Part shown: positions 9,007 to 61,522 of the stretch, piece after piece
Numbering within the stretch: the first letter of the stretch is position 1
Layout: every line of letters begins with the position of its first letter
Assembly: GCF_006345805.1 (NCBI RefSeq)
Contig: NC_043014.1
Location: forward strand, 11,098,001 to 11,162,000
Source: Octopus sinensis
Taxonomy: Eukaryota
Length of the DNA: 64,000 nucleotides
Reading direction: 5' to 3'
Made by a program: the position numbers and the translations under genes
Notes under the pieces: model-generated
Told to the model about the DNA's origin: nothing
The model's database searches: none
What the model saw: only the letters and a program-made list of their open reading frames with translations

Positions 9007-9048
<42 letters not shown>

Positions 9049-10479: not shown

Positions 10480-11390
10480 TCTTTTTTAATCAGCAAAAAG
10501 TTACAAAAGTAACCTTATGAAACTGCATATGTACATGTGTCTCTATGTGTGTGTGTTTATGTGTTTAGGTGTGTGTGTATGTGTGTACTATAATTTGGTG
10601 GGCATTCATCAAGTTGAGGGGAAATAGCTTATTAATTGAAAAGAAGTTTAAACTGAAATATTAAGAGTTACTTTGCTTCGAATCTTCAAGAAGTTTACAA
10701 TCGTGCAATCAATAATTTGCACAAACAGATGGAATTATGTTATGAACAACGAAGAGAAATATTATCCTGATTATCTCATTTAATTAATTAAATACATTAA
10801 TTAACTCGAACGAAGCATTTGTTTCTTTTCCATCACTGACATGCAACAAGACTTTCGTTCCAAACTAATTTATTATTCAATTTATTATTGAATTTATACA
10901 GAAACTTGCCTTCAGGTGCTTATTCCAAGCTGTTTGTGAATTCAAGGACGCATAGTTTGAATTGTTACCATACAATAGTAACATTGAACTGTCACGTCTG
11001 CTGCTTCGGAACTATGAAATTTATTGCTCGTTTCATGCATTATTTACATTCTCAATCAAATTGTTCATTGAACAGTGAAATAGCTAAAGAGAAACAGCAT
11101 TTTAAGTGCATTAACACTAAAAGGTCGACGTAAATCTCTTCATGGTTGATGAAATATAAATATCTGATAATAAACGAAGCTCGTTATCCTACCATGACGA
11201 GCTGCAAACTTCAGTTCTGAAGGTGATCTTGTAAGGTTGACCTTTACTGCTGTAAGAATCTAGCAATCGTCTGGAGTTTCTAACAACGGAGAGGACAAAT
11301 AAAATGTTGGTTAACCTTAAAACAAAGACAGTTCACATTGAGATTTCGGTTCGATTCTTCATTCAGTACATATCAAAGCAGGAATGAATA

Positions 11391-13838: not shown

Positions 13839-14254
13839 AGGTGTAGGAGTGGCTATGTGGTAAGTAGCTTGCCTACTAACCACATGGTTCCGGGTTCAGT
13901 CCCACTATGGGGCACCTTGAGAAAGTGTCTTCTACTATAGCCTCGGGCCGACCAAAGACTTGTGAGTGGATTTGGTAGACGGAAACTGAAAGGAGCATGT
14001 CGTATATAAATCCTTTAAAATGTTTTAGCCCGAAGGCTTCGGCCATGCTGGGGCACCACCGCTGAATATGTATGTATGTGTGTATATGTTTGTGTGTCTG
14101 TGTTTGTTCCCTCCAACATCACTTGACAACCGATGCTGGTGTGTTTACGTCCCCGTAACTTAGCGGTTCTGCAAAAGAGCCCGATGCAATAAGTACTAGG
14201 CTTACAATGAATAAGTGCTGGGGTCGAGTTGCTCGACTAAAGGCGGTGCTCCAG
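13839..14254 (+). mobile_element. SINE family A
   Basis: Near full-length; tail missing; short internal insertion. Confidence 0.75.
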
Positions 14255-14299
14255 TAGCCTAGCATATAGAAATATCTGAAAATTCAGAAAAAATTGTAA

Positions 14300-14438
14300 T
14301 ACATGCGTATAATAGGGATAACCACTAAGTGGACATCCAATATGCTAGAAATAGATCACCTAACTAATTATATCGTAGGTGATCTTCTTCTAGCATATCG
14401 GATGTCCACTTAATGGTTATCTCTATTATACGCATGTA
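14300..14438. repeat. 139-bp imperfect hairpin (small MITE)
   Basis: Arms 14300-14362 and 14376-14438, ~5 mismatches, 13-nt loop, TA ends. Confidence 0.7.
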
Positions 14439-14451
14439 TATATATATATTT

Positions 14452-15418
14452 GATGATCCGGTTCTTGACTGAAGACTGAGGGTTTCGAATGTCCTGTCCG
14501 TGTTTATTGTATCGTCTTCTAAGAGTTATACGTTCTTGTCCATGTTGTATTTTTCTACATACCTTAACATATATTCCAGGCGCCACGTACCCTCTTAACA
14601 TTAATGTGAGCACATATTCTTAATAACTGGTACGACTCTTTGTTTGTCTCTCTCTCTCTCTCACTTTTACTTGATCTGTCCCCTTCTCTCTCTACTCATC
14701 CTCTTTTTTCTTCTCTTTCCTCTGATTCTTTGGTCTAATCTTCCACTACCCTCCTATTCTTTGTCTCGCTCTGCACTCACAGGTCGCTCTTCGACACCCA
14801 TCCCTTTCCTCTCTGATTCCTTCTTTCTCTCTCTTCTCGCTCTTTGTCGCGTTTGTCCCTCTCTCTCTCTCTCCTCTCTCTCTCTTCCGTTGCTTCTCTT
14901 TCTTTTCTTTTCTCTCTTCTCTGTACGTGACTGCTGGCCGAAATTGCCTTTCAGCTTCTGACCAGCGTCGTGTTAACATCGTTGTTTTTCGTCCGCCGCT
15001 ATAGGCATCGCCGATAAGGCTCCTTTCCTTGCGCCAGAGAAAAATTTGTTGCTTGTTATCAGTCGTAAGACACTTGTTGTTGTTTTCACCGTTAATGCTT
15101 CTGTATTTCATGTTTCTGTATTCCATTATTTTTTGTTTTTTTTATATTCGTCCCTTTTGCTGTCCTGGTGTCCGTATGCATTCGATCCTTCTTCAGGAAA
15201 TCTACGCTCCCAGCTTAGTTTTTCTAATGCTCGTTGCTTAGTTTTTCTTGGAGGGCTGGCCGTGATCTAGTAATCTCAAGATTAATCAGCCGAAATTACT
15301 ACGATGATCCGGTTCTTGACTGAAGACTGAGGGTTTCGAATGTCCTGTCCGTGTTTATTGTATCGTCTTCTAAGAGTTATACGTTCTTGTCCATGTTGTA
15401 TTTTTCTACATACCTTAA
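14452..15418. mobile_element. Element bounded by 116-bp direct repeats (pseudo-LTR-like)
   Basis: 14452-14567 and 15303-15418 look identical (period 851); (TA)n on both flanks; a related sequence lies on the minus strand at ~10000-10170. Confidence 0.55.
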
Positions 15419-15423
15419 TATAT

Positions 15424-15481
<58 letters not shown>

Positions 15482-15526
15482 TATATATATACACATTATA
15501 TATATTATATATATTTTATATTAATA

Positions 15527-15557
<31 letters not shown>

Positions 15558-15584
15558 CATATATTACAATATATATATAAATAT

Positions 15585-15619
<35 letters not shown>

Positions 15620-15899
15620 ATGCATATGTATAGTGTATATATTTATTGTGTGTGTGTTTTTTCTTCTCAAGCGATTTGGGTTTGTTTACGTCTCCCTAAC
15701 TTAGCGGCTCGGTAAAAAGTGTCCGATAGAAAAAGTACCAGGTTAGTCACTCAAGATTAGTGAAAGCCAAGGAAGAATGAAAGCTAGTATCTTTTGCTTG
15801 TGTATAGGTGTTGTTGGATGTGAGGGCAAATAGATCAGCGGTGGGTGTAGAGAAGGGAAGAGGAGCAGATACAACCGAGCACCGTTCCTTCACCAGAGA

Positions 15900-16150
15900 T
15901 AGGAGAGTGTGAGGACAAGAAGAGTTCTGTTACTGCCTGTTGCGTTGGTGTGTTCTGGTTGAGAGTTACCCATGCAAGAGGTGACAATGTAATGGAGTTC
16001 CATTGTGGAGCAGTTTCGATACGAGATGGTTGAATGCTTTGCTGATGTCGAGGAAAACATGAATTGCATTGAAAGTTGGCATAGGAGCGTAGGTTTGTAG
16101 TGGGTCTGGTTTTAGGTCTGGCTTTAAGGAAATTGTACAGGTGCTCATTA
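15900..16150 (-). mobile_element. Degenerate LINE RT fragment
   Basis: VFLDISKAFNHL motif in ORF 16148-15966; heavily broken. Confidence 0.45.
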
Positions 16151-17024: not shown

Positions 17025-25618
<8,594 letters not shown>

Positions 25619-34233: not shown

Positions 34234-35796
34234 ATGTGTACATGTATGTGTGTGTGTGTAAGAAACTCTCCTTCACTGTGTACTTGGTAAAGTCACCCAC
34301 TCTATGCGTTTACAGCTGTAATCAATTTGTTTAATTCCAATTTTTGCTGTTTGGTTGCAGAAAATTTGCTTGCCAACATCTCAATGATAGAAACGATAGA
34401 AATCATTAGAAATGACGTATATATACATATATAGATACCATGAGATAAAGCTATATGAGATATTAGCAACAACAAAAAAATCAGAGAGGGAGAGAGAAAG
34501 AGAGAGATAATTGCAAGTGTCTTTTCGCTACTTGTAAGGAAATTTATATAAACATTCAGATGACGTGACAATGGGTTCTCCCTTAGGACCAACGTTTGCA
34601 GCATTCTATGCATCCAAAGATGTCTTGCAAACAAATTGCACATGCAAGTGCTACCAGTCAAAAACTCTGCATACCGGAAGCCAGCAATTGTATGGGGTCA
34701 TCAGGAGAGAATGCGCGCCGTTTCGGGGCCTACCTCATGACGGCATCAATGCGCAACAGCCCCCCTCACTGATACGAGGCCCCGCTTGCTAGATCAACTG
34801 GTTATCAAATAAAGCTCAATATTCTTCTAGCCATCACTCATCATCTCTTTTTAACCAAATCCAGAGGCTAGCCTTCAAAACTGTAGTTTGGATATCGGTC
34901 ATGGTGGTATTTACCTTATGATGAGTTAGGCCTAACGATAACAACAGTCGTCTCACACTGTGTCCAACGAACCCTCTACATCCAACTTCGATTGGATAGA
35001 AAATAAAATCAAAACTAGAACATATGATAGACACAAGATGCATAGATCATGTATTAGATGTAATATCTTTATATATAAAAGAAAGGTTGTGTGTCTGTCT
35101 ACTCCGATTTAGATTCCTAACTACTCCCACATTTTGCGATGCAGTTTAACTAAAACCGGGTATCTTATAGTTGTGATTCATATCGAGCCCTTTTGGGTAT
35201 TAGCGCGCGTCTACGATGAGTCAACGATTTAAAAAAAAATTTACCATAATTTTTTTTCCATTTTTAATGCATTTTTTGCTATTTTTTGGCTATAACTCTC
35301 TAAAAATGCTTTATAGTTATTTCCCTTACAAACCCGAGCAACGCCGGGCGATACTGCTAGTATACAATAAAGGAAGTTGAGAGACTAAAGGATGTCTCTG
35401 GACTATAACATCCAGAATAATACAAATGAGACACCGTTTTTGGACATAAATGTAGAGATCAAAACGGAAACGTTCATTACTAACTCTATTGTTTTTGAAG
35501 TTTAAATGTTTGTAGACAGCTAAAAATTAAAATGTTTGATATATGATGTTTTATCTCACCTCGAGCGATGTTTACCAAAAGTGAAGTTTTCTTCATCAAC
35601 CGGAATTCTTCTGTACTAATCAAGTTAATCGTTTGTTCTGTGCAAGGACAAGCAATAACAAGAACATCCATTTCGGGTAACATATCTTGCAAACGAGGGT
35701 AAAACGTAGCTTTGACTCGTTCTTCGTCTTCATTGCTTCTGTAAATGTAAGGAAAATGTGTTCAAGACTTTGAACTCTAAATAGCATTAGTAAGAA

Positions 35797-35975: not shown

Positions 35976-38900
35976 TAATAATAATAATAATAATAATAAT
36001 AATAGTAATAATAATAATAATAATTATAATAATAATAACAACAACAACATCGAAAAATACCTTAGGAATGAGAACCCAGGTTCGAGATGTCCCCAAGACA
36101 CCTGATGAAAGCTGGAAGGTATATCAGCCGAAACTTTATGTTTAACAACAAACAAGATGAGGACAAATGCAGTGTAGATAAGCACTTCACTTTAAATACA
36201 AAGAACAACTGGCAGTGAGACGGTTTTTAGCAGATACCCAAATGGTAATGGGTTAATACACTTAATGAAAAATGTTTTCAAGTGGTTCTCTAGTGGTGGG
36301 GATAAATGTAGGATTCTGTGCAAGCAAATACAATATTACAGCAAATAACTGGAATAAGGAATGAAATTATAATTTATCCTGATGGAAGCACGGTTTCCCA
36401 ACTTAATTGTTCCACCCATCAACCATATAGTTGTTTGTATATTGGTCAAAAGAATTGCCATGCAAGATGTAAAACCCATGTTTCTTGTGATGTGCTATGT
36501 AATCATGATCGGTCACCAGGGTGGCACGCCATCACTATGAATTTGTTGTCATCCACTTGCTGCACATAACTGACTCACAAATGAAAGTTTGTTTACATTC
36601 CTTTCTCCTGACTTGGATAAGTGTTCATCTAAAACAGCGGTTTCTCAACTGGGGTTCATATAGTCCTTGATGGTCAATAAAAGATTTTTGGGAGTCGATG
36701 CAACAAAATAGCAAACTGGGGATCTCCAGTGATATTTTAAGGGCCAATGAAAAAATTTTGCTTCTGTTGTATGTATTGATATTTATTGCAGGAAACAGCT
36801 AGGTTTCTTTCTCTAACATCTTATATAATTCAACCTACACAAGTTAATGTGTGAAAAACAAAATACTTATGGGATTACCCTGGGTTTCCCATCCATAAAG
36901 CTAAACCCTTTATGGGCAGAAACCCCAGGGTAATCCCATAAACTGGCCTCCCCCATTAAAATATATATGTGTATGTAAAATATATATATGTGTAGTATTT
37001 GTAAAACTAGTTTTTAAACATTGAATATTCTACCAAAATAAAATGGTAATCAAAGGGGTTCATAGATAGAAAATGATTGAGATCCCTGATGCACACAAAA
37101 AAAAAACAATGTTTCTTAACCTTTAGCACATATTAGGTATAGGTTTTATATGCTGAGAAAGATACATGATGAGACTTCTCCACATATCTGCAAACATACC
37201 CTCAGAAATTTTTCTGCAGATTATACTAATAGACTGAGACACTTTCGCTTGCTTTCAAAACATAGTGGCTGTGAGGCGCAGGACTGGCTGTGTGGTAAGT
37301 AGCTTGCTTACCAACCACACGGTTCCAGGTTCAGTCCCACTGCATGGCACCTTGGGCAAGTGTCTTCTACTATAGCCCCAGGCCGACCAAAGCCTTGTGA
37401 GTGGATTTGGTAGACGGAAACTGAAAGTAGCCTGTCATATATATGTATATATTTATATATGTATATGCTTGTGTGTGTGTGTGTTTGTGTGTCTGTGTTT
37501 GTCCCCCCCCCCAACATCGCTTGAAAACCGATGCTGGTGTGTTTACGTCCCTGTAACTTAGCAGTTCGGCAAAAGAGAGCGATAGAATAAGTACTAGGCT
37601 TACAAAGAATAAGTCCTGGGGTCGATTTGCTCGACTATAGGCGATGCTCCAGCTTGGCCGCAGTCAAATGACTGAAACAAGTAAAAGAGTAACAATCATT
37701 ATTTCCTTGCACATTGCGCTCATCCATCTCTCTAGGCTGCTATGTCCATCTCCCATCTGTAACACAGCTGCATTAAACGCAGAACAATGTTTTGATACAT
37801 TTAAAAATCAAACAAAAGTACTTCGCATTTGCTAGTAAATAGATTACTTATCTTCCTACCTTCGTTTCCTATTGTGATAAAGGATTTTCATGTCGAATGC
37901 AGTTGCTCTTAGAGCAATCTTAAAGCCAATATCTCCCATACCGACAATTCCAAGAGTTTTGTTCTTCACATTTGTTCCAAGTAAGCTCAGACAATCAAAG
38001 TTTGGATTTTCATTTTCCATTGCCATGCTGATACCTTGAAAATAACAAAATATTTGGCATTTTCAAATGTAATTATGAATTTATGATTGAAAAGGATAAT
38101 AGTTATTTTCCATGCAAATTTTGAGGTCTTATTGGTACACTCCCTACTTGGAGCCGTACAGTGCTTTACAATTTCAAGTTCCTCACTTGTTGGGGCACCA
38201 TGATGTCTCACTTGTTGGGGCACCATGATATATATATATATATACTTTTTGCATGCGGGACTCCGGTACCGTTTTTCATCTAGTACAGCATATTATGCTC
38301 ATAACAAACTACGCTGATGAAGCTACAGATATCCTTGTGATATTAATAGCTGAAACTGCAGTACGTAGGTAATTATCCCATTTAGTATATTTCTTTTGTC
38401 TCATCCATTGCTTTGGGTCGTGCTGAATTTTATTTTCATTTGAGAACATAATCCTTGTGGAGAATGGCGATTTGACGTCTATATCTAGCATGTTGACTGT
38501 CCACTTTTTCGTGTTCAGTCCTTAATTGGTATATATAAATATTTTAATCTTCGGATTCTTTTTAATGTGCTAGACCACTGGTTTTAATTGACTAATATCA
38601 ATTTCTACCCTTAATTTTTAAATATGAAATATATGTTCTCAAACCGATAAATTGACTGCTGCTAATTATTGGCTGCAGGCTACTTTTTCGATTATCAGCG
38701 CGCCAAAAGTAGAGGCATTTGAAAGATACATCCGAACGTAATAGGTTGTACTTTTTGCATGCGGGACTCCGGTACCGTTTTTCATCTAGTACAGCATATT
38801 ATGCTCATAACAAACTACGCTGATGAAGCTACAGATATCCTTGTGATATTAATAGCTGAAACTGCAGTACGTAGGTAATTATCCCATTTAGTATATTTCT

Positions 38901-39035
38901 TTTGTCTCATCCATTGCTTTGGGTCGTGCTGAATTTTATTTTTATTTGAGAACATAATCCTTGTGGAGAATGGCGATTTGACGTCTATATCTAGCATGTT
39001 GACTGTCCACTTTTTCGTGTTCAGTCCTTAATTGG

Positions 39036-39066
<31 letters not shown>

Positions 39067-42000
39067 ATAATTTTAGGGAGAATAACTCCAAATTTACAGG
39101 GAAAAATTCAATTTAGTATTAAATCAAATTTCACAGTATATATAAAATATAAATTAGAGATAAAACCACTATTATGCAACTCAAACAGTGATAGACATAA
39201 ACCAAAACATAAATAACAAATAAAATATATATTTTTTAAACAAATAACTTATAACTAGATCTCAAAAAGTATAAAATCAATGATCATTTGTATAAAATAT
39301 ATATATATTATTTGTTATTTATGTATTGGTTTATGTCTATCACTGAGTTGCATAATAGTAGTTTTATCTCTAATTTATATATATATATATATAGCACTTT
39401 GTTGTTGGTGTTGAGAGAGTCCGAAAGATATTCAGGTGACAGGTAATTTTATATCAAGAAAATTTTACCTAAGTTTAGATCTGATTGTAACTGAGGTTGC
39501 TAACAGAATATATCTGGATAATTTTTGGTGTTTAACAATCAACATTCTTTTCCCAGTTGGTTACCAAGTCAATTTCCCCCCCCCCCCATACTCATGTCTA
39601 ATTAGATAATTTTCAAGTTTCAAAAAATGATATCTAAAATGGAGTAAAATGAGTAGCGCTTAATTTCAGTGGTTATTCCTCTTTAACTGTATGGTTATTC
39701 CTCTTTAACATTTGTGAAGAAAAAAAGATACCCCTCGCCCCACCCCTAACCCTAAAACAGATTGAAATGCAATAGATCGACACTAGGGTCATAATTATGG
39801 GTGACAATTTCATATGACACTGCTAGTAAAAACTGCCGTTCAAACCGAAAAGATCCAAATAATTTATTTACTTAGTTTAAAAAATTATTTACATAGCTTT
39901 TTATTTACTTTGTTCGAAAAATATTTAATTTGTGTAAAAAATTATATACATTGTTTTAAAAAATAATTTATTTACTTTGCATTTTATTTACTTTGTTCGA
40001 AAAATATTATTTAATTTTCTTTGATATGTATTCAGCCTTGAAATACAAACATACGCGCAAGTCGTTGTAGGATCGACTACTTACAACTAGCTATCGCGAG
40101 TGCGCGCACCGGGACCACTGTTTGCTAGTAGTACCCTCGTTGTATCCCCACCCTCACAACTTTCACTAATTGGCGATCTTTCATCTCTAGTAGACCTTTC
40201 CGTCGATTTCCGTAAATTTTTTTTTTTTTTACATATGGGCTTGCGGGAACTTTTGAAGTAATGAGAGCGAAAGAGACTAAGAGAAAGCCATTTTATGACG
40301 AGGGAAGTTCTTTTGAAGTTACCGTGCATGGCAAGCATTGATGTACATGTGTGTGTGTTTGATGGGGTGTGGGAGACAGACAGTATGTTGTGTAAGTGAA
40401 GTGCTTCTGTTAGTGTGTGTGAAGAGACAGAGTAATGTGTGAAAGAGAGAGATAACTGAAATTTTTTACTCGGTGCATGTGTATATGTATGTATATTACT
40501 TTAAAAGTTCCCGCAAGCCCATATGTAAAATAAAAATATTTTTTTACGGAAATCGACGGAAAGGTCTACTAGAGACGAAAGATCGCCCACTAATTAACCT
40601 TTCCAAATATGAAAACCAACTTTCAAACAACAAGGGGGCCTCTACGTCACACTGTCGCTCATCCTACAAAAGTTGACGACAGTATCTCCGTTACATTATC
40701 GCTTTAAATAAGACAGGGTCTCTTTAGATAATGAAGTTTTATCTTGGTTTTTGTCGGCGTGAGAGGCAATGTAAAAACTTCAGTAGTAGCATATAGTCGG
40801 TACTACTTAAGAAGGGTGGAAAGGGTTTTATGGGGCTTAATGCAGAATCGCACATCTCCGTGAAAAATGCATTTTTTTTTTTTAATAAAAAAAAGCTATT
40901 TTTTCGTTTTAGAGGGGCGGAGATTATGAATAGACAAAAAACAATGTAATTTTTTAATTTCACCCCCCTCACCCCTTTCCCCCTCCCAATTAAAAATGTT
41001 GGTACTACTTAAGACGAGTGGTCCCGGTGCGCGCACTCGCGTACTCGCGCATCCGCGCTAGCTAGTCGTGACTAGTCGATCCTACAACGACTACCTAGCA
41101 AAGTAAATAAAACACAAAATAATTTTTTTACACAAATTAAATAATTTTTTTAAACAAAGTAAATAAAACACAAAAACACAAAGTAAGGATCGATTAGTCA
41201 TGACTAGCTAACGCGGATGCGCGCACCGGACCACTCTTCTTGAGTAGTACCCATATAGTCGAGATTTTATATGAATGCCTTTTCAAGCTAACCTCAATTA
41301 TGTTTATATCGCACATGGATACATTGAAACTCCGACGTCTGGCAGCTGATTTGGTAGACACCCATAAAATTATTAACCATCTTACAAACAATAACTCTGA
41401 TTTTTTTTAACTTACGGGTCGGACCACGTCGCTGTATTTACCCGGTGCATATCGCCACAGACTCCCGGCGACTGACGGCATCGGTCGCGGCAACGTCCAC
41501 GTGCACGTGGGCGATACCGCGAGATTCGGTTCGTTCTTACGATATCGAGCACGGAAACGCGGCGGAGCTGCGGGCTAAGGCGGACGTCAATAGGCGGGCT
41601 AAAGCGGGCGTCAACGGGCGAGCGAACGCTGCGTCTGAAAGGCGGGTGGCGTGGCGGCGGAATTTCGAAGACGCGCCAGCCGTGTAGAGTCGATCTTGCA
41701 CCGGCAAACGGGGTTACAAACAATAACTCTGAGCACCTTTTCAAACTCCATCTGTCTAACATCCGTGGACATGTTTACAAAGTCAGAAAACAGCACAGCT
41801 CCCATGACTTTCAGAAACATTTTTTCACGCTAAGAGTTGCTGAAGCGTGGAACAAACTGCCGGCATCAGTTGTTAGTTGTCGGAGCACTGCATCCTTCAA
41901 AACTTCCATGCTTCCTGAGATTCGCCAACACTACACCTGATTTTCTCTCCTCCATACACACGCAGGCATGTATCTGACTCATACACCGTTCACTTTCCAG

Positions 42001-43196
42001 ACATATTTGTACATTACTGCATATACTTTATACGCAATTTTGACAAGTTGTGGTGCACCTGAGCACTGTATACAATAATTTCATTATTATTATTATTTAA
42101 ATTAAGTAGCTTGCTTACCAACCACATGGTTCTGGGTTCAGTCCCACTGCATGGCACCTTGGGTAAGTGTCTTCTACTATAGCCTCGGGCCGACCAATGC
42201 CTTGTGAGTGGATTTGGTAGACGGAAACTGAAAGAAGCCTGTCGTATATATGTATATATGTGTGTGTGTGTTTGTGTCTGTGTTTATCGTTCCCAACATC
42301 GCTTGACAACCGATGCTGGTGTGTTTACGTCCCCGTAACTTAGCGGTTCGGCAAAAAGAAACTGATAGAATAAGTACTAGGCTTACAAAGAATAAGTCCT
42401 GGGGCCGATTTGCTCGACTAAAGGCAGTGCTCCAGCATGGCCGCAGTCAAATGACTGAAACAAGTAAAAGAATAAAAGAATAAGTAATTCTTACTAACCC
42501 GGCCAAAACCGGCTCTGGCTCTGTAGTACAAATGTCTTGTTTTCATAAGTTTTTCATCAAAATATACCACCAAACATTAGTTGCAATTTATATTCCTAAC
42601 ACTAGCTGAATGATAGCTAAGTTATTTTACTAGATTCTTTGTTATATTTAAAATAATTGAAAGAAACACAGAGCATCTCAAAAATAAATACGGTAACGAA
42701 AGGGCAAATTCGGTGTGGTGGGGAAAATAAAAGCAGAATTCATTTAGGGGAAATAATTCTCCTTGTTTAGAATTATCTACCCTGAATACCATAAATACTT
42801 ACCCGGCAGTATTTTCCGAGACGATATTAATATTAAAGTAATGGCAAGGTCTGCTGCACTGTCGGAAATAACGTATCTAGTGTTTCCAACTCGTATTCCT
42901 TTCTCTTTAGCACATTTTAGATCGATATGGTCCACTCCGACTCCAATACTTGAAATTACTCTCACACGAGGAAGAGTTGCTAAAAGTTTGTCTGTAATGT
43001 TCGCATGCATTCCTATTGAAATGATACCAATAACATCTTCCTTTAAGCCTGGATTCTGTGCAATATCATCCTGGAAAACTACTTGGAAAGAATTTCCGAG
43101 GCGACTCACAAGCTGTTCAAATAATTCGTCTTTCACCTCATCGTCCTTGAAGTGTTGCGCGGTTATTAGAACCGAAGCTTTCATATCTGCCGTCAT
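33247..43196 (-). CDS. GR2: 2-hydroxyacid dehydrogenase paralog, 332 aa, intact
   Basis: Exons 43196-42803, 38034-37860, 35738-35560, 33497-33247 (999 nt), GT-AG, in phase. GMGDIG, YHNRKRR, VNIARG, DVTEPEPLP, TPHCG. First true ATG at 43196 (the ORF-track start at 43202 is TTG). Confidence 0.93.
33661..34077 (-). mobile_element. SINE family A
   Basis: Full-length copy. Confidence 0.8.
34517..34619 (+). mobile_element. Penelope-like RT fossil in GR2 intron 3
   Basis: Reads LYKHSDDVTMGSPLGPTFAAFY, resembling the PLE motif LYKQxDGVAMGSPLGP; homologs at ~46737-46838 and ~55014-55110 (GVAMGSPQGP). Confidence 0.55.
34620..35010 (-). mobile_element. 3' end of a restriction-like-endonuclease non-LTR retrotransposon (HERO/NeSL-like)
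   Basis: PIEVGCRGFVGHSVRRLLLSLGL...KASLWIWLKRD; a second copy lies on + at ~59185-59500. Confidence 0.55.
35066..35360 (+). mobile_element. Non-autonomous Helitron, second subfamily with the same 3' end
   Basis: TC start, same 3' hairpin and CTAG end; absent at the homologous GR3 site (~46905). Confidence 0.75.
36635..37088. mobile_element. Old hAT/Charlie-like MITE
   Basis: Ends cagcggtttctcaac / gattgagatccctg; TSD not preserved. Confidence 0.45.
37274..37690 (+). mobile_element. SINE family A
   Basis: Full-length copy. Confidence 0.8.
38309..38368 (+). ncRNA. Type I hammerhead ribozyme, copy 1 (complete core)
   Basis: Stem I CTACG/CGTAG; CTGATGA 38314-38320; stem II AGCTA/TAGCT extended by GATATC/GATATT; GAAAC 38352-38356; palindromic stem III ACTGCAGT; GUA cleavage site after 38363. 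Confidence 0.88.
38815..38874 (+). ncRNA. Type I hammerhead ribozyme, copy 2 (identical to copy 1)
   Basis: Same sequence as 38309-38368 shifted by 506 nt; predicted cleavage after 38869. Confidence 0.88.
40172..40587. mobile_element. MITE family C (GGCGATC ~90-bp TIR, 8-bp TSD)
   Basis: TSD CACTAATT at 40164-40171 and 40588-40595; arms ~40172-40261 and ~40496-40587. Confidence 0.75.
41325..42095 (+). mobile_element. CR1-like LINE 3' end, interrupted by a 313-bp insertion
   Basis: Joined halves read LRRLAADLVDTHKII...IRGHVYKV...FFTLRVAEAWNKLPASVV, then a 3' UTR ending in (ATT)n. Confidence 0.72.
41401..41713 (-). other. Unidentified GC/CpG-rich insertion with A-tail and 19-bp target-site duplication
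   Basis: TTACAAACAATAACTCTGA at 41382-41400 and 41714-41732; T8 at 41401-41408. Confidence 0.75.
42103..42484 (+). mobile_element. SINE family A, 5'-truncated
   Basis: Lacks the A-box, otherwise matches. Further fragments at ~455-545, ~3120-3275, ~23050-23165, ~24640-24855, ~57470-57590. Confidence 0.78.
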
Positions 43197-43242
43197 ATTC
43201 AAATGTCACTTGATTCACAAAATTTTTATCGCTCTTTTCAAT

Positions 43243-44555
43243 GAGGCGACGAGCTGGCAGAAACGTTAGCACGCCGGGCGAAATGCGTTGCCGTATTTCG
43301 TCTGTCGTTACGTTCCGAGTTCAAATTCCGCCGAGGTCGACTTTGCCTTTCATACTTTCGGGTTCGATAAATTAAGTACCAGTTACGCACTAGGGTCGAT
43401 GTAATCGACTTAATACCTGTGTCTGTCCTTGTTTGTCCCCTCTGTTGAGCCCCTCGTGGGTAATAAAGAAATAGGTATTTCGTTTGCCGCTACGTTCTGA
43501 GTTCAAATTCCGCCGAGGTCGACTTTGCCTTTCATCCTTTCGGGGTCGATAAATTAAGTACCAGTTACGCACTGGGGTCGATGAAATCAACTTAATACCT
43601 GTGTCTGTCATTGTTTGTCCCCTCTGTTGAGCCCCTTGTGGGTAATAAAGAAATAGGTATTTCGTCTGCCGCTACGTTCTGAGTTCAAATTCAGCCGAGG
43701 TCGACTTTGCCTTTCATCCTTTCGGGGTCGATAAATTAAGTATCAGTTACGCACTGGGGTCGATGTAATCGACTTAATACCTGTGTCTGTCCTTGTTTGT
43801 CCCTCTGTTGAGCCCCTTGTGGGTAATAAAGAAATAGGTATTTCGTTTGCCGCTACGTTCTGAGTTCAAATTCCGCCGAGGTCGACTTTGCCTTTCATCC
43901 TTTCGGGGTCGATAAATTAAGTACCAGTTACGCACTGGGGTCAATGTAATCAACTTAATACCTGTGTCTGTCCTTGTTTGTCCTCTCTGTTGAGCCCCTT
44001 GTGGGTAATAAAGGAATAGGTATTTCGTCTGCCGCTACGTTCTGAGTTCAAATTCCGCCGAGGTCGACTTTGCCTTTCATCTTTTCGGGGTCGATAAATT
44101 AAGTACCAGTTACGCACTGGGGTCGATGTAATCGACTTAATACCTGTGTCTGTCCTTGTTTGTCCCCTCTGTTGAGCCCCTTGTGGGTAATAAAGAAATA
44201 GGTATTTCGTCTGCCGCTACGTTCTGAGTTCAAATTCCGCCGAGGTCGACTTTGCCTTTCATCCTTTCGGGGTCGATAAATTAAGTATCAGTTACGCACT
44301 GGGGTCGATGTAATCGACTTAATACCTGTGTCTGTCCTTGTTCGTCCCTCTGTTGAGCCCATTGTTGGTAATAAAGAAATAGGTATCTCGTCTGCCGCTA
44401 CGTTCTGAGTTCAAATTCCGCCGAGGTCAACTTTGCCTTTCATCCTTTCGGGGTCGATAAATTAAGTACCAGTTACGCACTGGGGTCGGTGTAATCGACT
44501 TAATACCTATATTTGTCCCCTCTATGTTTAGCCCCTTGTGAGTAATAAAGAAATA
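43243..44555 (+). repeat. SINE family B head followed by 7 tandem ~182-bp units (SINE-derived satellite)
   Basis: Units start at 43311, 43493, 43675, 43856, 44038, 44220, 44401; tRNA-like head at 43243. Confidence 0.9.
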
Positions 44556-44765
44556 CGTCATATTCAAATGTCACGTGATTGACAAACTTTTATCGCTCTT
44601 TTCAATTAAAATGAGATGATTTGCTTAGTCATGCATTTATTTTAATGTCTCTTACTTGATTCAGTCATTGGACTGCGGCCATGCAAGAACCCTATTAGGC
44701 ATGCTGGTGACGAATATTCTCTCATCAGAGGACGAATATTCTCTTGAGGAATTTCTTGCTAAGTT

Positions 44766-45665
44766 TCATGCAACAATCTCGAGATCTGACTTTGAGGATG
44801 CTTTGTTTTTCCTTTTATGAAGTGTCCTGTCCATTATACTCCAGAGGTGTTCAATGGGATTCATATCTGGTAACTGGCTTGGCCATTGAAGATTTTTAAT
44901 GCCATTCTCATTCAACAAATCTTGGGTCTTTTTAGCTGTGTGACAAGGAGCCCTATCTTCCACAAACAAAAAGTATTCTTTAAACATTTCACCACGGGAG
45001 AAGATTGGAAGGAGTTGCTTCTGCAATATGGTTACATATTTATCTGAGTTTATGTTTCCCTCACATTCCGTCTCTGCTTGACCCTTGCTCCAAACTGCTC
45101 CCCAGACCATCACAGAATACCTGCGGTGTTTCATTGTTGGCTGCAATTCTCTCACGTAAAATTCGTGATCCTGGAGTCTCGAGACCCACACTGGACCACT
45201 ATCAGAAAATACACCAAATCTGGACTCATCAGAGAATATGACAGTGTCCCAAAATGCTAGCGGCCACTCCAACATCTCACTAGCCCCATCTTTTCTCCGA
45301 TTGATATTGGCTGGTTGAAGAAGTGGCTTCCTTCTTGCTGCTCTGCCATAGTAGCCAAGTTTGTGGAGATACCTGATAGCTGTTCCGGGGACTGACATCA
45401 ACTTGTTCTGCTATGTCAGAAGCCTTGCAACGAGGATTATCTCTACGCTTCTCTTAACAATGCGAAGGGTCCTGGTCGTCCTGGACAAGGTAATGTTGAC
45501 TCCTAGTTCTCCTTGGTGAATGCACAATCACTCTATTAACTGTAGAAAGAGGGATCCCAAGGTTTTCTGCGATTTTGCGCTAACTTAGTCCCCCCTCAGA
45601 TTGACCCACAATACGGCCATTTTGGAATTCGGACAGTTCCAAGGCTTCTTTTGCATGTGGCTTGA
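44766..45665 (-). mobile_element. Decayed Tc1-like (DD34E) transposon
   Basis: ORF 45401-44766: ARRKPLL, VIFSDESRF, VMVWGA, EDRAPCH...WPSQLPDMNPIE (34 residues between D and E). N-terminal ELSEFQNGRIVG piece at ~45590-45660 ends in a stop. Confidence 0.88.

Positions 45666-47638: not shown

Positions 47639-47707
<69 letters not shown>
47341..47707. repeat. (AAT)n microsatellite filling most of GR3 intron 2
   Basis: Direct reading; homologous (AAT)n at ~35798-36040 in GR2. Confidence 0.95.
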
Positions 47708-48123
47708 CTTCCTACCTTCGTTTTCTATTGTGATAAAGAATTGTCATGCCGAATACGGTTGCTCTTAGAGCAATCTTGAAGCCAATATCTCCCATACCAA
47801 CAATTCCAAGAGTTTTGTTCTTCACATTTGTTCCAAGTAAGCTCAGACAATCAAAGTTTGGATTTTCATTTTCCATTGCCATGCTGATACCTTGAAAATA
47901 ACAAAATATTTGGCATTTTCAAATGTAATTATGAATTTATGATTGAAAAGGATAATAATTGTTATTTTCCATGCAAATTTTTAGGTGTTATTGGTACGCT
48001 CCCTACTTGGAGCCATACAGTGCTTTCTATTTTCAAGTTCCTCACTTGTTGGGGCACCATGATGTCTCCTTTCTGGGGCACCACAATATGTTGCTCGCTG
48101 GAGCACCATTATAAATATGTATA

Positions 48124-49547: not shown

Positions 49548-52500
49548 ATACACTGCCCTACATCTTAAAGTGTGTTTCTTCTAAAGATATATGTCTTTTT
49601 ACACACACACACACACATGCACACACACACACACACACACGCATATAAATTAAAGAAGAACCACCTTTTATCAATTCAACATTGAAACAATAATGATATA
49701 ATTAAATTATACCATATAGAAAAAAATTAAATATACGATAAAATCATATACCAATAATTAAGTAAATTTCAAAATGATAAATAAAAAGTATATAATTGGT
49801 AAAAGGACTACAAGTGTTTTGTGGGTATATTTTCAAACTGATAACAGTAAAATCAATTCAATTTAAATACAGGCACTCTTCAGGTCCAAGATAAAAACAA
49901 TAAAATAATCAAATAAATATACGTATATAATCTTGTAAGAAAATATAAATAAATACAAAAATACGTAATTCTACAATAAAAATCAAACAAAATACAATAA
50001 TATATCATATCATAAAAACACGAAATATCTTAACAAATATATTCGGGTATAAATATAACTAGAATTAATAGGTATTTATAATTCTTGTAGTCATAGTTTG
50101 TAATAGCATTATGTATATAAGTTAAGATGAATTTTTTTTTAGTATATATTACTTGATTAGAATAAGATTTAACTTCGATGTTTATTAAATAAATAATTTA
50201 CTTTAATGTATATAGATTAAATTATAGTATTACAGTTTTAAATACACACACACACACACATGCTACCAAGTATATTTTAAATTCTGGTTCCCCTCTCCAC
50301 AAGTGCAACAAGAGATGCTACACACTTATTTTTTTATTACTCACTAATTTTGGATCTATCATGTTTTCGTATACTATATTTTCATATATTTTTACATGCA
50401 TGTTCTAAAATATCTTTCTTCTATTTTCATACGATAAACACTTACCCGTCAGTATTTTCCTGGTCGATATTAATATTAAAGTAATGGCAAGTTCTGCTGT
50501 ACTGTCGGAATTAATGTATCTAGTGTTTCCAACTCGTATTCCTTTTTCTTTGGCACATTTTAGATCGATATGGTCAACACCTACACCAAAACTTGAAACT
50601 ACTCTCACGCGAGGAAGAGTTGTTAAAAGTTTGTCTGTAATGTTCGCATGCATGCCTATTGAAATGATACCAATAACGTCTTCCTTTAAGCCTGGATTCT
50701 GTGCAATGTCATCCTGGAAAACTACTTGAAAAGAAGTTCTGAGGTGACTCAAAAGCTGTTCAAATAATTCGTCCTTGAAGTGTTGCACGGTTATTAGAAC
50801 CGAAGCTTTCATATCTGCCGTCATGTTCAAATGTCACATGATTCACAAACGTTTGTCGCTCTTTTCAATGAAAATCAGCGATTTGCTCAGTCACGCATTT
50901 ATTTTAATGTCTCTTACTTGATTCAGTCATTGGACTGCGGCCATGCTGGGGCACTGTCTTGACGGGTTGGAGTTATCGGACGTAACTGATGATGATTATT
51001 TTCGTAGAGTATATCCTGTTAAAAATGTGTGTAACTCAAAGGCGAAGTTTCAAAAAACAGGATTTATTTTGTTGCATTTACAATTATAAACAGACCGCGT
51101 CGAATCGATGAAAATCAACATATCATTTTAACTTTAACTGTATGCATTAGTTGACGATCTACATAGCCTTGTGAAATTGCTAATGAGGAAAAGGTGTGTG
51201 ACAGATGTGATAGGGAGGGTTATCTGTAAATGTGGTGGTCATGACATTTACAGCCTATTTAATCAAGTCTGAGTAGATGAATGTGAGTGTGGAACAAATG
51301 AGTGAGGGAGAGTAGTTTTCGTTTGACCCAGTGGCATGGTTTCTCGTTCAGCCCCAAAACCGTCTGCAACAGGCTGTCATGATCGCAAGCAGGGAACGGA
51401 CGCCTTTGGCTGGTCAGTTGGTCGTATTTATAACAGTCTGTGGTGGGTGGATCTTCAAGTTGCCACACGCATTCTTAGTAGTTTAGAGTAGGCTCGAATT
51501 AGAGATTATTCTTTGTGGCTAATGGCATGAGTCCTGATTGGAAAAAGAAGACAACAGCACCAGACACATCTCGCTTCTAAAATACCTATTTCTTTATTAC
51601 CCACAAGGGGCTAAACACAGAGGGGACAAACAAGGACAGACATAGGTATTAAGTCGATTACATCAACCCCTAGTGTGTAACTGGTACTTAATTTATCGAC
51701 CCCGAAAGGATGAAAGGCAAAGTCGACCTTGGCGGAATTTGAACTCACATCATAAAGACAGACGAAATACCGCTAAGCATTTTGCCCGGCGTGCTAACGT
51801 TATCCCGTCAAGGTAATCCTGCATATAAAATCTGCCACACATCATGGATTGAGAATGCAGACCCCTGTGTTTGAAACTAAGTGACATGTGTTGACGATTT
51901 ACCCCCGAACTGAAATAGGCTCCCAGCCCCTGTATCATGAATAGTTATGCGGACCATTCCTAACGAAAGCCAGAGCTTCTTTCAAGCTCTACAATTTTAT
52001 GTACTGGTTGAAGGAATTAAGAAAAGATATACTTTTATTTTAGTTGTTTACAAGGATCTTTACCTTTTGACTGGCAGATTTAGAAAAAAAATTTTTGTAA
52101 CTAAACACTTTCAAACTTCGGACACTGGTACAATGTGTCATATAAAACATCTTTTACTTTTAGCGTTTTTGAGAAAAGTTAACATTTACGAAGTTATTTC
52201 GTGTTAAAGTTGTCGTATTTTCGGTAATTTCAACTAATCAATGACGTGTATTCAGCTGAATAAAATTACTGCTGTTGTTTGTCAACAACAACTTTCTCGA
52301 TCAGCCGTTCAAAGGGAAAAGATCCGTTTACAATATTTTGTTTATACTCTTATACATTCAAAGTTCACAAATTTCCTTATTTAAATTATGAATCATATTC
52401 CATTCGATAATATCAATATGATTACAAAACTTCTTTGTAAAAGATATTTTCTGTTTGGTCGACACTAATTTTTAAATTACTGGAGTCCGCTGCTCTACAC

Positions 52501-60476: not shown

Positions 60477-60987
60477 CATCATCATCATTATTATCACCGA
60501 TGTTTAATTTACCCAGTCACACATAACTAAAAGAAGTTCGGGCAAAAAATATTTAAAAAAAAGAATTATCTCTCTTGAACACCATACACTTACCTTGCAC
60601 TATTTTCCGTGTTGAAAGAAGCATTAAAGTTATGGCAAGTTCCGCGGTGCTGTCGGCAATAACATATTTGGTGTTTCCAACTCGCAACCCTTTTTCTTTG
60701 GCCCATTTCAGATCAAGATTATCCACTCCCATTCCATGGTTTGAAATCACTTTCAGATTCGGCAGAGTTCGAATTAATTTGTTTATTTCTTTCGAATCTG
60801 GACCCGGTGTAACAATACCAGCGATGTCGTTCTTTATGCTTGGATTCTGTTGGATATCGTCCAGAAAAACGACTTGAAAACAATTTCTCAAGCGACTCAA
60901 ACATGTTTCAATAAAATTGCTCGTCACTTTGCTATTGCTTAGAGTCCGTAAGCAGACTAAAACTGAAGGTTTCGCTTCCATCGCCAT
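54528..60987 (-). CDS. GR4: 2-hydroxyacid dehydrogenase paralog, 332 aa, intact
   Basis: Exons 60987-60594, 56839-56665, 55576-55398, 54778-54528 (999 nt), GT-AG, in phase. GMGDIG, YHNRTQR, VNIARG, DVTEPEPLP, TPHCG. Confidence 0.93.
57133..57455 (-). mobile_element. RTE-clade LINE 3' end
   Basis: ORF 57455-57177: WETLAANRSSWRSAI...CPTCGRGFLARIGLTSHLRSH, followed by a short 3' UTR. Confidence 0.8.
57953..58269. mobile_element. MITE family B (GGTACTACT long TIR, 9-bp TSD)
   Basis: ~80-bp CpG-rich TIRs, AT-rich core; TSD TTCACATTG at 57944-57952 and 58270-58278. Related copies or ends at 41001-41251, ~40050-40140, ~57600-57645. Confidence 0.8.
59185..59500 (+). mobile_element. Second copy of the RLE-retrotransposon 3' end
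   Basis: TTMSDIQTTIEKASHWIWLKRD plus a 3' UTR similar to the reverse complement of 34620-34850. Confidence 0.55.
59620..59854 (+). mobile_element. CR1-like LINE 3' tail (same family as 41870-42095)
   Basis: Near-identical to 41870-42095, ends in (ATT)n. Confidence 0.68.
59855..60276. mobile_element. MITE family A copy
   Basis: Same TIRs and body, opposite orientation to 3759-4198. Confidence 0.78.
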
Positions 60988-61522
60988 ATTTAAATGCCAC
61001 GTCAGTCACAAATAGTCGTCGCTCTGTCGAATGAATTATGAGAGGAAATTCTCAGTTTATACCTCTTATCTTTTGCATATCACTTGTGTTGTTGTTGTTT
61101 CAAGTACATGACGATAGACGTGTAACAATTAATGAAGTATTTAATCAATGATAAGTTAAATCATGAACAAACACAATGTATGATGGTGGTAGTGATGCTG
61201 CTTCCTCTCTTGAAGTTACGCGTGACTGACCTTTAAGTTTATTATCAATTGGAAAAAGCGCGCGACACAGTGTGTGACCAAGGCCGTTCCATTTTGAAAT
61301 ACCTCTACAAACTTCCTGGCGGGTTACTTAACAGTAGCTGTCTGGGAAAGACTTCCGCCTGTCTCCCCACCCCCACCACTTTCTCCCAAATTTGTTTATT
61401 AAAATTTCTTTTTTTGCCCAAAACCCCCGTTTTTGGATACGGAGGTTCCGGAAAATTGCCAGAAATTTGCATTGTTAAATTCTCCCCTACCCAAATTTTC
61501 AATTTTGACATATTTCCCCAAC

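What the first reader, a model, noticed from the sequence alone, without database searches (positions are those of the whole stretch)
38243..39043. Double type I hammerhead ribozyme unit: candidate retrozyme that would release a 506-nt monomer or circular RNA
Seen in sequence: a partial tandem repeat (295-bp repeats, period 506, one difference seen) inserted in a TA tract in GR2 intron 1, antisense to the gene. Both repeats carry an identical hammerhead: stem I CTACG/CGTAG, CUGAUGA, stem II AGCUA/UAGCU with a further GAUAUC/GAUAUU helix, GAAAC, palindromic stem III ACUGCAGU, and a GUA site (cuts after 38363 and 38869). The 10.1-11.1 pair is A-U rather than the usual G-C. Established: short palindromic stem III favours dimeric (double) hammerhead cleavage; tandem hammerhead repeats in Penelope-like elements and metazoan non-LTR retrozymes yield monomers that circularise. 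Inference: a young, non-coding, self-cleaving element whose transcript gives a 506-nt RNA (38364-38869), possibly an undescribed cephalopod retrozyme family.
Basis: partly seen in the sequence, partly recalled or inferred. Interest (0 to 1): 0.92.

Follow-up and report, generated by a model that had tools for sequence, protein, structure and literature searches.

The report
Octopus hammerhead retrozyme-like tandem insertion
A young, non-coding 801-bp insertion in an Octopus sinensis intron has the layout of a known class of animal mobile elements that carry a self-cutting hammerhead RNA motif, but cutting, RNA circles and copy number are untested.

Summary
Window 38243-39043 is 1.58 head-to-tail copies of a 506-bp unit: two 295-bp repeats with one mismatch, set inside a (TA)n tract. 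The window is Octopus sinensis chromosome CM016876.1, and the insertion lies antisense in intron 1 of a GRHPR-like gene.

Each repeat carries a complete type I hammerhead core, 5-bp helices I and II, and a 2-bp helix III whose palindrome ACUGCAGU allows a double hammerhead. The motif is not chance: 240 decoy cores gave a mean of 0.008 sites, and the true core gave 4.

The 506-nt plus-strand RNA is unusually structured (z about -5.3 to -5.9; minus strand -1.7).

Partial tandem, a hammerhead in each repeat, a (TA)n target and no ORF match metazoan non-LTR retrozymes, which are non-autonomous derivatives of Penelope-like elements.

Three points count against it:
- Rfam finds no hammerhead, even at E<=10.
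- The 10.1-11.1 pair is A-U, not G-C.
- I found no other copy, transcript or autonomous partner.

Verdict: a new member of a known kind, of moderate interest. Self-cleavage and a 506-nt circle are inferred, not shown.

The parts
38243..39043 (+). Whole insertion: 1.58 head-to-tail copies of a 506-bp non-coding unit (35% GC)
   Evidence: Direct repeat with spacing 506 and exact limits. The only match in the window is to itself. The longest ORF is 60 aa, has no homologue and is not in the protein collection.
38243..38537 (+). Repeat copy 1 (295 bp), the pseudo-LTR-like left arm
   Evidence: Identical to 38749-39043 except 38437 C vs 38943 T. The JC distance is 0.0034, against 0.062 for the GR2/GR3 paralogous flank.
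38538..38748 (+). Part of the unit present only once (211 bp)
   Evidence: Lies between the two repeats. It belongs to the long-range paired structure of the 506-nt RNA.
38749..39043 (+). Repeat copy 2 (295 bp). It ends inside the unit's own UAUAUAUA stretch, where it merges with the target (TA)n.
   Evidence: Copy 1 continues ...GGTATATATAAATATTTT, while copy 2 continues ...GGTATATATATATATAT.
38309..38368 (+). Hammerhead-like motif, copy 1 (type I topology); predicted cut between 38363 and 38364
   Evidence: Descriptor match with 5-bp helices I and II. All core positions are canonical: C3-A9, G12-A14, A15.1-U16.1, A17. The 10.1-11.1 pair is A-U. The local MFE keeps helices I and II.
38815..38874 (+). 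Hammerhead-like motif, copy 2 (identical); predicted cut between 38869 and 38870
38364..38869 (+). Predicted 506-nt monomer RNA between the two cut sites
   Evidence: MFE -132.4 kcal/mol, z -5.26 or -5.94. The reverse complement gives z -1.67. Of 18 control 506-nt windows, 17 lie between -2.05 and +4.1.
38228..38244 (.). Left (TA)n target tract. Homology with the paralogous GR3 intron ends here.
   Evidence: 37850-38231 is 94% identical to 47706-48089 and the match stops at the TA tract.
39036..39063 (.). Right (TA)14 tract
   Evidence: TRF and the sequence itself.

Best explanation
This is a recent retrotransposon-type insertion of a non-autonomous, non-coding element of the metazoan 'non-LTR retrozyme' / Penelope-like-element (PLE) derivative kind, in Octopus sinensis.

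Shown: 1.58 tandem units of 506 bp sit in a (TA)n microsatellite. Each repeat holds a complete type I hammerhead motif. The + strand RNA is strongly and strand-specifically structured.

Inferred mechanism:
1. A + strand transcript spanning both motifs folds the two copies into a double hammerhead. The palindrome ACUGCAGU gives an 8-bp helix III in trans, and the helix I strands are swapped between copies.
2. It cuts after each GUA and releases a 506-nt RNA with 5'-OH and 2',3'-cyclic phosphate ends.
3. A host tRNA ligase may circularise that RNA.
4. A PLE reverse transcriptase/GIY-YIG endonuclease supplied in trans nicks AT-rich DNA and copies more than one unit of a circular or multimeric template.

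Step 4 would explain three features: the insert is longer than one unit, both GUA|C junctions are intact, and its ends do not coincide with the cut sites. The right end lies in the unit's own UAUAUAUA stretch, which suggests priming or joining by microhomology with the (TA)n target.

The element is antisense to the host gene, so the host pre-mRNA carries only the inert complement.
For: - Architecture.
- Motif, and evidence that it is not chance: 0.003 expected per window; 240 decoys, mean 0.008, against 4 true sites.
- Double hammerhead: it is the predicted MFE of two motif copies (-40.5 vs 2 x -16.7 kcal/mol). In cis it costs only +2.5 kcal/mol above the MFE of the 806-nt transcript. The monomeric active fold (-11.8) loses to a misfold that buries C3-G5 (-16.7).
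- Strand-specific structure: z -5.3/-5.9 for the + strand vs -1.7 for the - strand, as reported for retrozyme circRNAs (PMC7761336).
- Other hammerhead-like motifs: further descriptor matches occur in other short repeats of the same window and in O. bimaculoides, with different helices and the same core.
- Insertion: paralogue homology stops at the TA tract.
- No RT or long ORF.
- Literature:
  - PLEs form partial tandems with hammerheads in the pseudo-LTRs and work as dimers (PMC4209133).
  - PLEs prefer (TA)n or AT-rich targets (PMC8557442, PMC11167929).
  - Non-LTR retrozymes are PLE derivatives with units of 51-972 bp, found as monomers, dimers and multimers (10.64898/2026.07.22.740005).
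  - Octopus genomes carry about 30 Penelope families (PMC13282606).
Against: - Rfam 15 gives no hammerhead hit at any threshold tried.
- The G10.1-C11.1 pair, highly conserved even in PLE mini-hammerheads (PMC4209133), is A-U here. No loop-loop tertiary contact is evident.
- Only one locus is known. No second copy, transcript or autonomous partner was found.
- No clean empty site: the O. bimaculoides orthologous position falls in an assembly gap, and the paralogue matches on one flank only.
- A target-site duplication cannot be read in a microsatellite.
- PLE hammerheads cleave poorly in vitro (PMC4209133). In one tested PLE they were dispensable for insertion (PMC11167929).
Confidence: 0.68

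Rival explanations
1. It is a PLE-type non-autonomous insertion, but the hammerhead does not drive a circular-RNA cycle. The partial tandem would be an ordinary PLE pseudo-LTR structure copied from an unprocessed multimeric or read-through transcript. The motif would be weak, protein-dependent or already inactive, and no 506-nt circle would accumulate.
For: - In the only PLE reconstituted in vitro, the hammerhead needed the PLE protein, catalytic mutants did not affect insertion, and RNA-seq showed no ends at the cut site (PMC11167929).
- PLE mini-hammerheads cleave poorly (PMC4209133).
- The pair next to the core is A-U, and Rfam is negative.
- The insert ends are not at the cut sites.
- The MFE of the full transcript shows the inactive monomer fold.
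Against: - The palindromic helix III and the swap-competent helix I are exactly what a double hammerhead needs, and it is energetically accessible.
- The strong + strand-specific structure of the unit resembles retrozyme circRNAs (PMC7761336).
- Every core nucleotide is intact in both copies.
Confidence: 0.22
2. It is a local partial tandem duplication of ordinary intronic DNA (slippage or unequal exchange next to a microsatellite) that happens to contain a hammerhead-like string. It would be neither a mobile element nor a ribozyme.
For: - Only one locus is known, and no family members were found by any route available.
- Rfam is negative.
- No target-site duplication can be read.
- A 2.7-Gb genome would hold on the order of a hundred chance matches to my strict descriptor (extrapolated).
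Against: - The decoy test on the real sequence gave a mean of 0.008 sites against 4 true sites.
- The motif coincides with a tandem layout, a (TA)n site, a palindromic helix III and a z of about -5.9 on the motif's own strand only.
- The whole 801 bp is absent from the paralogous intron beyond the TA tract.
- Other hammerhead-like motifs lie in TA- or AAT-associated repeats nearby.
Confidence: 0.08
3. The 506-bp duplication is an artefact of the long-read assembly.
For: The locus sits between microsatellites, and only one assembly could be inspected: L001 is the same assembly as the window.
Against: The copies differ at one internal base (38437 C vs 38943 T). The second copy ends at a different junction from the first. 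Neither is expected from a simple mis-join.
Confidence: 0.02

Closest known systems
Metazoan non-LTR retrozymes (Cervera & de la Pena 2020, PMC7229834; Li, Clavereau & Pollet 2026 preprint, 10.64898/2026.07.22.740005)
   Same: Head-to-tail repeats of a few hundred bp, each with a type I hammerhead. Low GC (35% here). No ORF and no LTR. A weak helix III (2 bp plus tetraloop, 'similar to invertebrate HHRs'). A highly self-paired monomer RNA. Dimers occur alongside monomers and multimers. Proposed mobilisation by PLEs through templates longer than one unit.
   Different: The unit (506 bp) is above the 150-450 bp range first described, though inside the 51-972 bp range of the 2026 survey. The 10.1-11.1 pair is A-U rather than G-C. 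Helix II is long and two-part (5 + 6 bp). There are no recognisable loop 1/loop 2 contacts. It is not detected by Rfam. Only one locus is known, and expression is unknown. The host is a cephalopod, for which I found no published retrozyme description.
Hammerheads in the pseudo-LTRs of Penelope-like elements ('min-HHR', Cervera & de la Pena 2014, PMC4209133)
   Same: The motif sits in both direct terminal repeats of a partial tandem. Helix I is short (4-5 bp) and helix II longer than usual. The 15.2-16.2 pair and loop 3 are palindromic. Predicted to act as dimers. Inserted in AT-rich or (TA)n DNA.
   Different: There is no RT/GIY-YIG ORF between the repeats (211 bp only). There is no unpaired base between A9 and 10.1. 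The G10.1-C11.1 pair, conserved in min-HHRs, is replaced by A-U.
Newt/axolotl satellite 2 hammerhead repeats (double-hammerhead cleavage)
   Same: Tandem repeats with a type I motif whose helix III is too weak in the monomer and is completed by a second copy.
   Different: Those are 330-350-bp units in up to about 10^5 copies, with conserved loop-loop contacts and G10.1-C11.1. Here there is a single 1.58-unit insertion.
Plant LTR retrozymes (PMC4918200)
   Same: A non-coding element with a hammerhead in each of two ~300-bp direct repeats flanking a short unique region. The circRNA intermediate is 600-1000 nt.
   Different: Plant elements have type III hammerheads, true LTRs, a tRNA-Met primer-binding site, a polypurine tract, 4-bp TSDs, GC above 55% and Ty3/Gypsy helpers. 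None of these applies here.

Membership tests
Hammerhead ribozyme, type I | Conserved core: C3 U4 G5 A6 N7 G8 A9, G12 A13 A14, A15.1-U16.1, H17 | tested here: met
   CUGAUGA 38314-20, GAA 38352-54, A38355-U38362, A38363. Identical at +506.
Hammerhead ribozyme, type I | Three helices around the core, with the open ends in helix I | tested here: met
   Helix I 5 bp, helix II 5 + 6 bp, helix III 2 bp plus UGCA (8 bp in the dimer)..
Hammerhead ribozyme, type I | G10.1-C11.1 pair closing helix II | tested here: not met
   A38321-U38351, followed by G-C. This pair is highly conserved in canonical and PLE hammerheads (PMC4209133).
Hammerhead ribozyme, type I | Match to the curated covariance models (Rfam Hammerhead_1 and relatives) | tested here: not met
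   No hit at gathering score in 64 kb, nor at E<=10 in 1.1 kb or 111 nt.
Hammerhead ribozyme, type I | Site-specific self-cleavage 3' of H17 | not testable with these tools
   Needs transcription and cleavage assays.
Hammerhead ribozyme, type I | Compensatory changes in the helices among relatives | tested here: inconclusive
   The two copies are identical. Other hammerhead-like motifs (8839-8881 -, L002 11021-11064 +) have the same core with quite different helices, but they are not demonstrably homologous and fold weakly.
Metazoan non-LTR retrozyme | Head-to-tail repeats, each carrying a type I hammerhead | tested here: met
   1.58 units, two motifs 506 nt apart.
Metazoan non-LTR retrozyme | Non-coding, low GC, unit of a few hundred bp | tested here: met
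   Longest ORF 60 aa, with no homologue. GC 35%. The 506-bp unit is within the 51-972 bp reported (10.64898/2026.07.22.740005).
Metazoan non-LTR retrozyme | Monomer RNA with a stable, highly self-paired fold | tested here: met
   z -5.26 and -5.94 for the + strand, -1.67 for the - strand. Controls are mostly within +/-2.
Metazoan non-LTR retrozyme | Many dispersed genomic copies (a repeat family) | not testable with these tools
   No eukaryotic genome search is available. There is no other copy in the window or L002, and the indirect look-ups were empty.
Metazoan non-LTR retrozyme | Expressed as linear and circular monomer RNA | not testable with these tools
   No transcriptome access.
Penelope-like element, non-autonomous derivative | Partial-tandem insertion creating direct pseudo-LTRs that carry the hammerhead | tested here: met
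   295-bp repeats flank 211 bp, with a motif in each repeat. See PMC4209133, PMC8557442, PMC11167929.
Penelope-like element, non-autonomous derivative | Insertion into AT-rich or (TA)n DNA | tested here: met
   TA tracts at 38228-44 and 39036-63. See PMC8557442, PMC11167929.
Penelope-like element, non-autonomous derivative | Sequence similarity to the pseudo-LTR or 3' end of an autonomous PLE of the same genome | not testable with these tools
   The window has no RT/GIY-YIG ORF: the longest ORF is 214 aa and Pfam finds no RT. Octopus PLE sequences could not be fetched.
Penelope-like element (autonomous) | Single ORF with a telomerase-like RT and a GIY-YIG endonuclease | tested here: not met
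   Only 211 bp lie between the repeats, and the ORFs are <=60 aa.

The most novel reading that the evidence does not exclude
An active, very recently mobile cephalopod retrozyme whose hammerhead has a non-canonical A10.1-U11.1 pair and an extended helix II, and is therefore invisible to Rfam. It would still cleave as a double hammerhead and yield an abundant 506-nt circular RNA in octopus tissues. That would mean covariance-model censuses undercount hammerheads in cephalopods, and that PLE-driven circRNA elements are still moving in octopus genomes.
Probability: 0.28. Interest if true: 0.5.

Novelty: new member of a known kind. Interest (0 to 1): 0.35.

Why it matters
If confirmed, it would add cephalopods to the animals known to carry retrozyme-type elements. 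It would also give a very young copy (one substitution between its repeats), which is useful for studying how PLE machinery copies more than one unit of a hammerhead RNA into (TA)n DNA.

The A-U pair at 10.1-11.1, together with the Rfam miss here and at the other hammerhead-like motifs nearby, suggests that standard annotation misses part of the hammerhead repertoire in octopus genomes.

It does not change the current picture of these elements. The class, its link to PLEs and the dimeric cleavage mode are all published.

Tried and rejected
- Rfam cmscan at gathering score and at E<=10 on 64 kb, 1.1 kb and 111 nt gave no hammerhead, only noise hits to snoRNA and miRNA models. The second motif at 8839-8881 gave the same result.
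- A metagenome scan with CTGATGAAGCTA-N(10-30)-TAGCTGAAAC gave six hits. All are coding-sequence coincidences in AT-rich microbes, without helices I or III.
- I looked for other copies through spurious ORF calls. Eight ORF variants of the element are not in the 15-billion-protein collection, and the 70-aa frame has no homologue.
- Empty-site test in O. bimaculoides: the orthologous intron is found (window 39399-39552 and 41238-41315 match L002 10604-11457), but the position of exon 2 and the element falls in an N gap, 13550-15924, that begins right after a TA tract.
- Paralogue GR3 as an empty site: only the exon-2 side aligns, up to the TA tract. The rest of the intron is unrelated.
- Search for an autonomous partner in the window: there is no ORF over 214 aa. 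Pfam finds only Tc1/mariner transposase remnants and a zinc-finger tail. A short PLE-like RT string at about 34560-34640 ('MGSPLGP') is too decayed to use as a query.
- tRNA/SINE head in the element: none.
- I considered a plant-type LTR retrozyme and rejected it: the hammerhead is type I, the GC is low, and the target is (TA)n.
- I did not use the third large protein search because no adequate PLE query was available.
Full report
OBSERVATION

The repeat finder reports a two-copy direct repeat, 38243-38542 / 38749-39048, 99% identical, with spacing 506. Base by base, 38243-38537 equals 38749-39043 (295 bp) with a single mismatch, 38437 C vs 38943 T. The next mismatch, 38538/39044, is where copy 2 runs into the flanking (TA)n. 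The insert is therefore 1.58 head-to-tail copies of a 506-bp unit of 35% GC. Tandem Repeats Finder missed it only because its longest period is 500.

(TA)n tracts flank both ends (38228-38244 and 39036-39063). The left border reads ...TATATA|CTTTTTGCATGC. The right border falls inside the unit's own GGTATATATA stretch, so neither the exact ends nor any target-site duplication can be read.

HOST AND CONTEXT

The window is Octopus sinensis. Locus L001 (GCA_006345805.1, CM016876.1, 11134407-11158824) is 100% identical to window 36407-60824.

The window holds a tandem array of glyoxylate/hydroxypyruvate-reductase-like genes (2-hydroxyacid dehydrogenase family) on the minus strand. The element lies in the intron between them, on the opposite strand, and inside the range of an annotated gene with a 332-aa product.

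The paralogous intron of the next gene is 94% identical to 37850-38231, and the match stops at the TA tract. Beyond that point the two introns share nothing. This supports 'inserted after the gene duplication' on one flank only.

In O. bimaculoides the orthologous intron can be followed to within about 350 bp of the element's right end (window 39399). After that the assembly has a gap that starts right after a TA tract, so no clean empty site could be obtained.

The repeats differ by a JC distance of 0.0034, against 0.062 for the paralogous flank. On the scale used for O. vulgaris repeats (JC 0.09 about 25 My, PMC13282606), the insertion is of the order of a million years old or less. This estimate rests on a single substitution.

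THE MOTIF

Each repeat contains:
- CUACG
- CUGAUGA
- AGCUA-CA-GAUAUC-CUUGU-GAUAUU-AA-UAGCU
- GAAA
- CUGCAG
- UA | CGUAG

Every core position of a hammerhead is canonical: C3-A9, G12-A14, A15.1-U16.1, C15.2-G16.2, A17, C1.1-G2.1. The topology is type I. The one deviation is the pair next to the core, A10.1-U11.1 followed by G-C. G10.1-C11.1 is highly conserved, even in the mini-hammerheads of Penelope-like elements (PLEs) (PMC4209133).

Rfam 15 does not recognise the motif. There is no hit at gathering score in the window, and none at E<=10 in 1.1 kb or in 111 nt. Membership in the hammerhead family therefore rests on a descriptor, not on the curated model.

IS IT CHANCE?

My type I descriptor requires helix I, CUGANGA, helix II, GAAA, a 15.2-16.2 pair, UH, and the helix I return strand.
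- With 5-bp helices it is expected 0.003 times per 64 kb on both strands; with 4-bp helices, 0.01 times (300 first-order Markov simulations).
- On the real window, 240 decoy descriptors in which the two conserved boxes were permuted gave a mean of 0.008 sites. None had more than one site, and only 2 of 240 had any. The true boxes gave four sites.

The four sites are the two copies here plus two others: 8839-8881 (-), CCAC CUGAAGA UUGUC..GACAA GAAA C-GAUU-G UA|GUGG, and a weaker one at 9569-9605 (-).

A fifth motif is in the O. bimaculoides locus (L002 11021-11064), ACAC CUGAUGA a GGCUG..CAGCU GAAA CG UU|GUGU, with a decayed copy at window 36095-36144.

These motifs have the same core and quite different helices, and they sit in short repeats next to (TA)n or (AAT)n tracts. 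Rfam also misses the one I tested, and on their own they fold unremarkably. Together they show that hammerhead-type motifs are a real feature of repeats in these genomes. That fits the roughly 30 Penelope families annotated in O. vulgaris (PMC13282606).

STRUCTURE PREDICTIONS

As a monomer the active fold is disfavoured. It scores -11.8 kcal/mol, against -16.7 for a misfold that pairs C3-G5 with the helix III strand.

Two copies cofold into the classic double hammerhead, with an 8-bp helix III from the palindrome ACUGCAGU and the helix I strands exchanged, at -40.5 against 2 x -16.7 kcal/mol. In the 806-nt two-copy transcript, the best fold containing the in-cis double hammerhead is only 2.5 kcal/mol above the MFE.

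The 506-nt RNA between the predicted cut sites has a long-range, branched fold, with z = -5.26 or -5.94. Its reverse complement gives -1.67. Of 18 control windows of the same length, 17 fall between -2.05 and +4.1. The strand asymmetry argues for structure at the RNA level on the strand that carries the motif, as described for retrozyme circRNAs (PMC7761336).

WHAT IT IS

The combination is:
- a partial tandem that creates two direct terminal repeats
- a type I hammerhead in each repeat
- a weak palindromic helix III
- a short helix I and a long helix II
- an AT-rich/(TA)n target
- low GC and no ORF (longest 60 aa, no homologue)

This is the published signature of PLE insertions and of their non-autonomous derivatives, the metazoan non-LTR retrozymes (PMC4209133, PMC7229834, PMC8557442, PMC11167929, 10.64898/2026.07.22.740005). 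The unit length is within the 51-972 bp reported in the 2026 survey, where dimers occur beside monomers and multimers.

The window holds no RT or GIY-YIG ORF. The longest ORF of any kind is 214 aa, and Pfam finds only DNA-transposon remnants. The element must therefore be mobilised in trans.

MECHANISM

This section is inferred. A + strand transcript across both motifs forms the double hammerhead, cuts after 38363 and 38869, and frees a 506-nt RNA. That RNA may be circularised by a host ligase, as shown with RtcB for axolotl retrozyme RNA (PMC7229834). A PLE enzyme nicks AT-rich DNA and reverse-transcribes more than one unit.

The copy itself gives two hints. Both GUA|C junctions are intact, and the insert ends are not at the cut sites, so the template was circular or multimeric rather than a linear cleaved monomer. 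The right end lies in the unit's UAUAUAUA stretch, which is compatible with microhomology to the (TA)n target.

There is a serious caveat. For the one PLE reconstituted in vitro, hammerhead cleavage needed the PLE protein, was dispensable for insertion, and left no trace in RNA-seq (PMC11167929). PLE mini-hammerheads also cleave poorly (PMC4209133).

COMPARISON AND NOVELTY

The closest known things are metazoan non-LTR retrozymes and PLE pseudo-LTR hammerheads.

The differences are the A-U pair at 10.1-11.1, the two-part 11-bp helix II, no evident loop-loop contacts, a unit a little larger than first described, and a cephalopod host.

I found no paper describing retrozymes or PLE hammerheads in cephalopods. 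However, 235 Rfam hammerhead-1 hits are listed for the giant squid genome (PMC6962438), and retrozymes are characterised in another mollusc, the mussel (PMC7229834). I therefore file this as a new member of a known kind.

WHAT COULD NOT BE DONE

No eukaryotic genome or transcriptome could be searched by DNA. Copy number, the autonomous partner, presence or absence in O. vulgaris, transcription and circular junctions all remain open. A metagenome pattern scan and two indirect protein-based look-ups found nothing relevant.

VERDICT

Interest is moderate (0.35).

Noticed in passing
window 8730-9035 (-), motif at 8839-8881: A ~290-bp repeat flanked by (TA)n/(TG)n carries a second, unrelated hammerhead-like motif: CCAC CUGAAGA UUGUC-GAUCAA-GACAA GAAA C-GAUU-G UA|GUGG, with U10.1-A11.1. 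Rfam does not detect it, and it folds weakly on its own.
   Followed up: partly
window 39038-39391 (+): Immediately right of the finding, separated only by (TA)14, is a rearranged copy of the 8730-9035 repeat. Its first 123 nt are 85% identical. A palindrome follows (arms 39147-39240 / 39287-39380) built from the repeat's 3' end, and the hammerhead part is missing. Another fragment lies at 22731-22834. So the TA tract received at least two insertions.
   Followed up: partly
L002 (O. bimaculoides) 11021-11064 (+); window 36095-36144 (+): This is a loop-less 'mini-hammerhead' of the PLE type: ACAC CUGAUGA a GGCUG..CAGCU GAAA CG UU|GUGU. It sits in the 3' part of a repeat with a tRNA-like head and an (AAT)n tract. 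The O. sinensis copy in the window is decayed (88% over 147 bp).
   Followed up: partly
window 9569-9605 (-): A further descriptor match, with a bulged A after A9, a G10.1-C11.1 pair and a palindromic AUAU helix III. Its helix I is only AUAU/AUAU in an AT-rich context, so it may be chance.
   Followed up: no
window 17000-61000 (-): A tandem array of at least four or five paralogous GRHPR-like (2-hydroxyacid dehydrogenase) genes. First exons are at 42780-43205, 50408-50833 and 60556-61005. C-terminal exons are near 17100, 33300, 46400 and 54600. NCBI names one product 'probable 2-ketogluconate reductase'.
   Followed up: partly
window 43293-44565: About seven head-to-tail copies of a ~182-bp unit (93-95% identical), just upstream of GR2 exon 1. 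They show up as staggered self-matches and repeated ORF fragments.
   Followed up: no
window 40600-41105 (+): This control window gave the most extreme folding z-score (-8.1). It probably contains an inverted repeat or a MITE.
   Followed up: no
window 38182-38229: A 25-bp unit (CTCACTTGTTGGGGCACCATGATGT) is duplicated 1.9 times directly left of the TA tract. A diverged version is in the paralogous intron (48040-48090), so it predates the insertion.
   Followed up: partly
window 34560-34640 (+): A short reverse-transcriptase-like string (DDVTMGSPLGPTFAAFY) reminiscent of PLE RT motifs. It is truncated, Pfam-negative, and duplicated together with the GR paralogues.
   Followed up: partly
window 677-1180 (-), 44769-45410 (-): Remnants of a mariner transposase (PF01359) and a Tc1-like transposase (PF13358 DDE_3).
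   Followed up: yes
window 1648-2220 and 6370-6654 (+): ORF fragments with matrix-metalloproteinase hallmarks (PRCGVSD cysteine switch, HEFGHALGLPHS zinc site), judged by eye only.
   Followed up: no
L002 13550-15924: The O. bimaculoides assembly (GCA_001194135.2) has an N gap exactly where the orthologous exon 2 and insertion site should be. The gap starts right after a (TA)n tract.
   Followed up: yes
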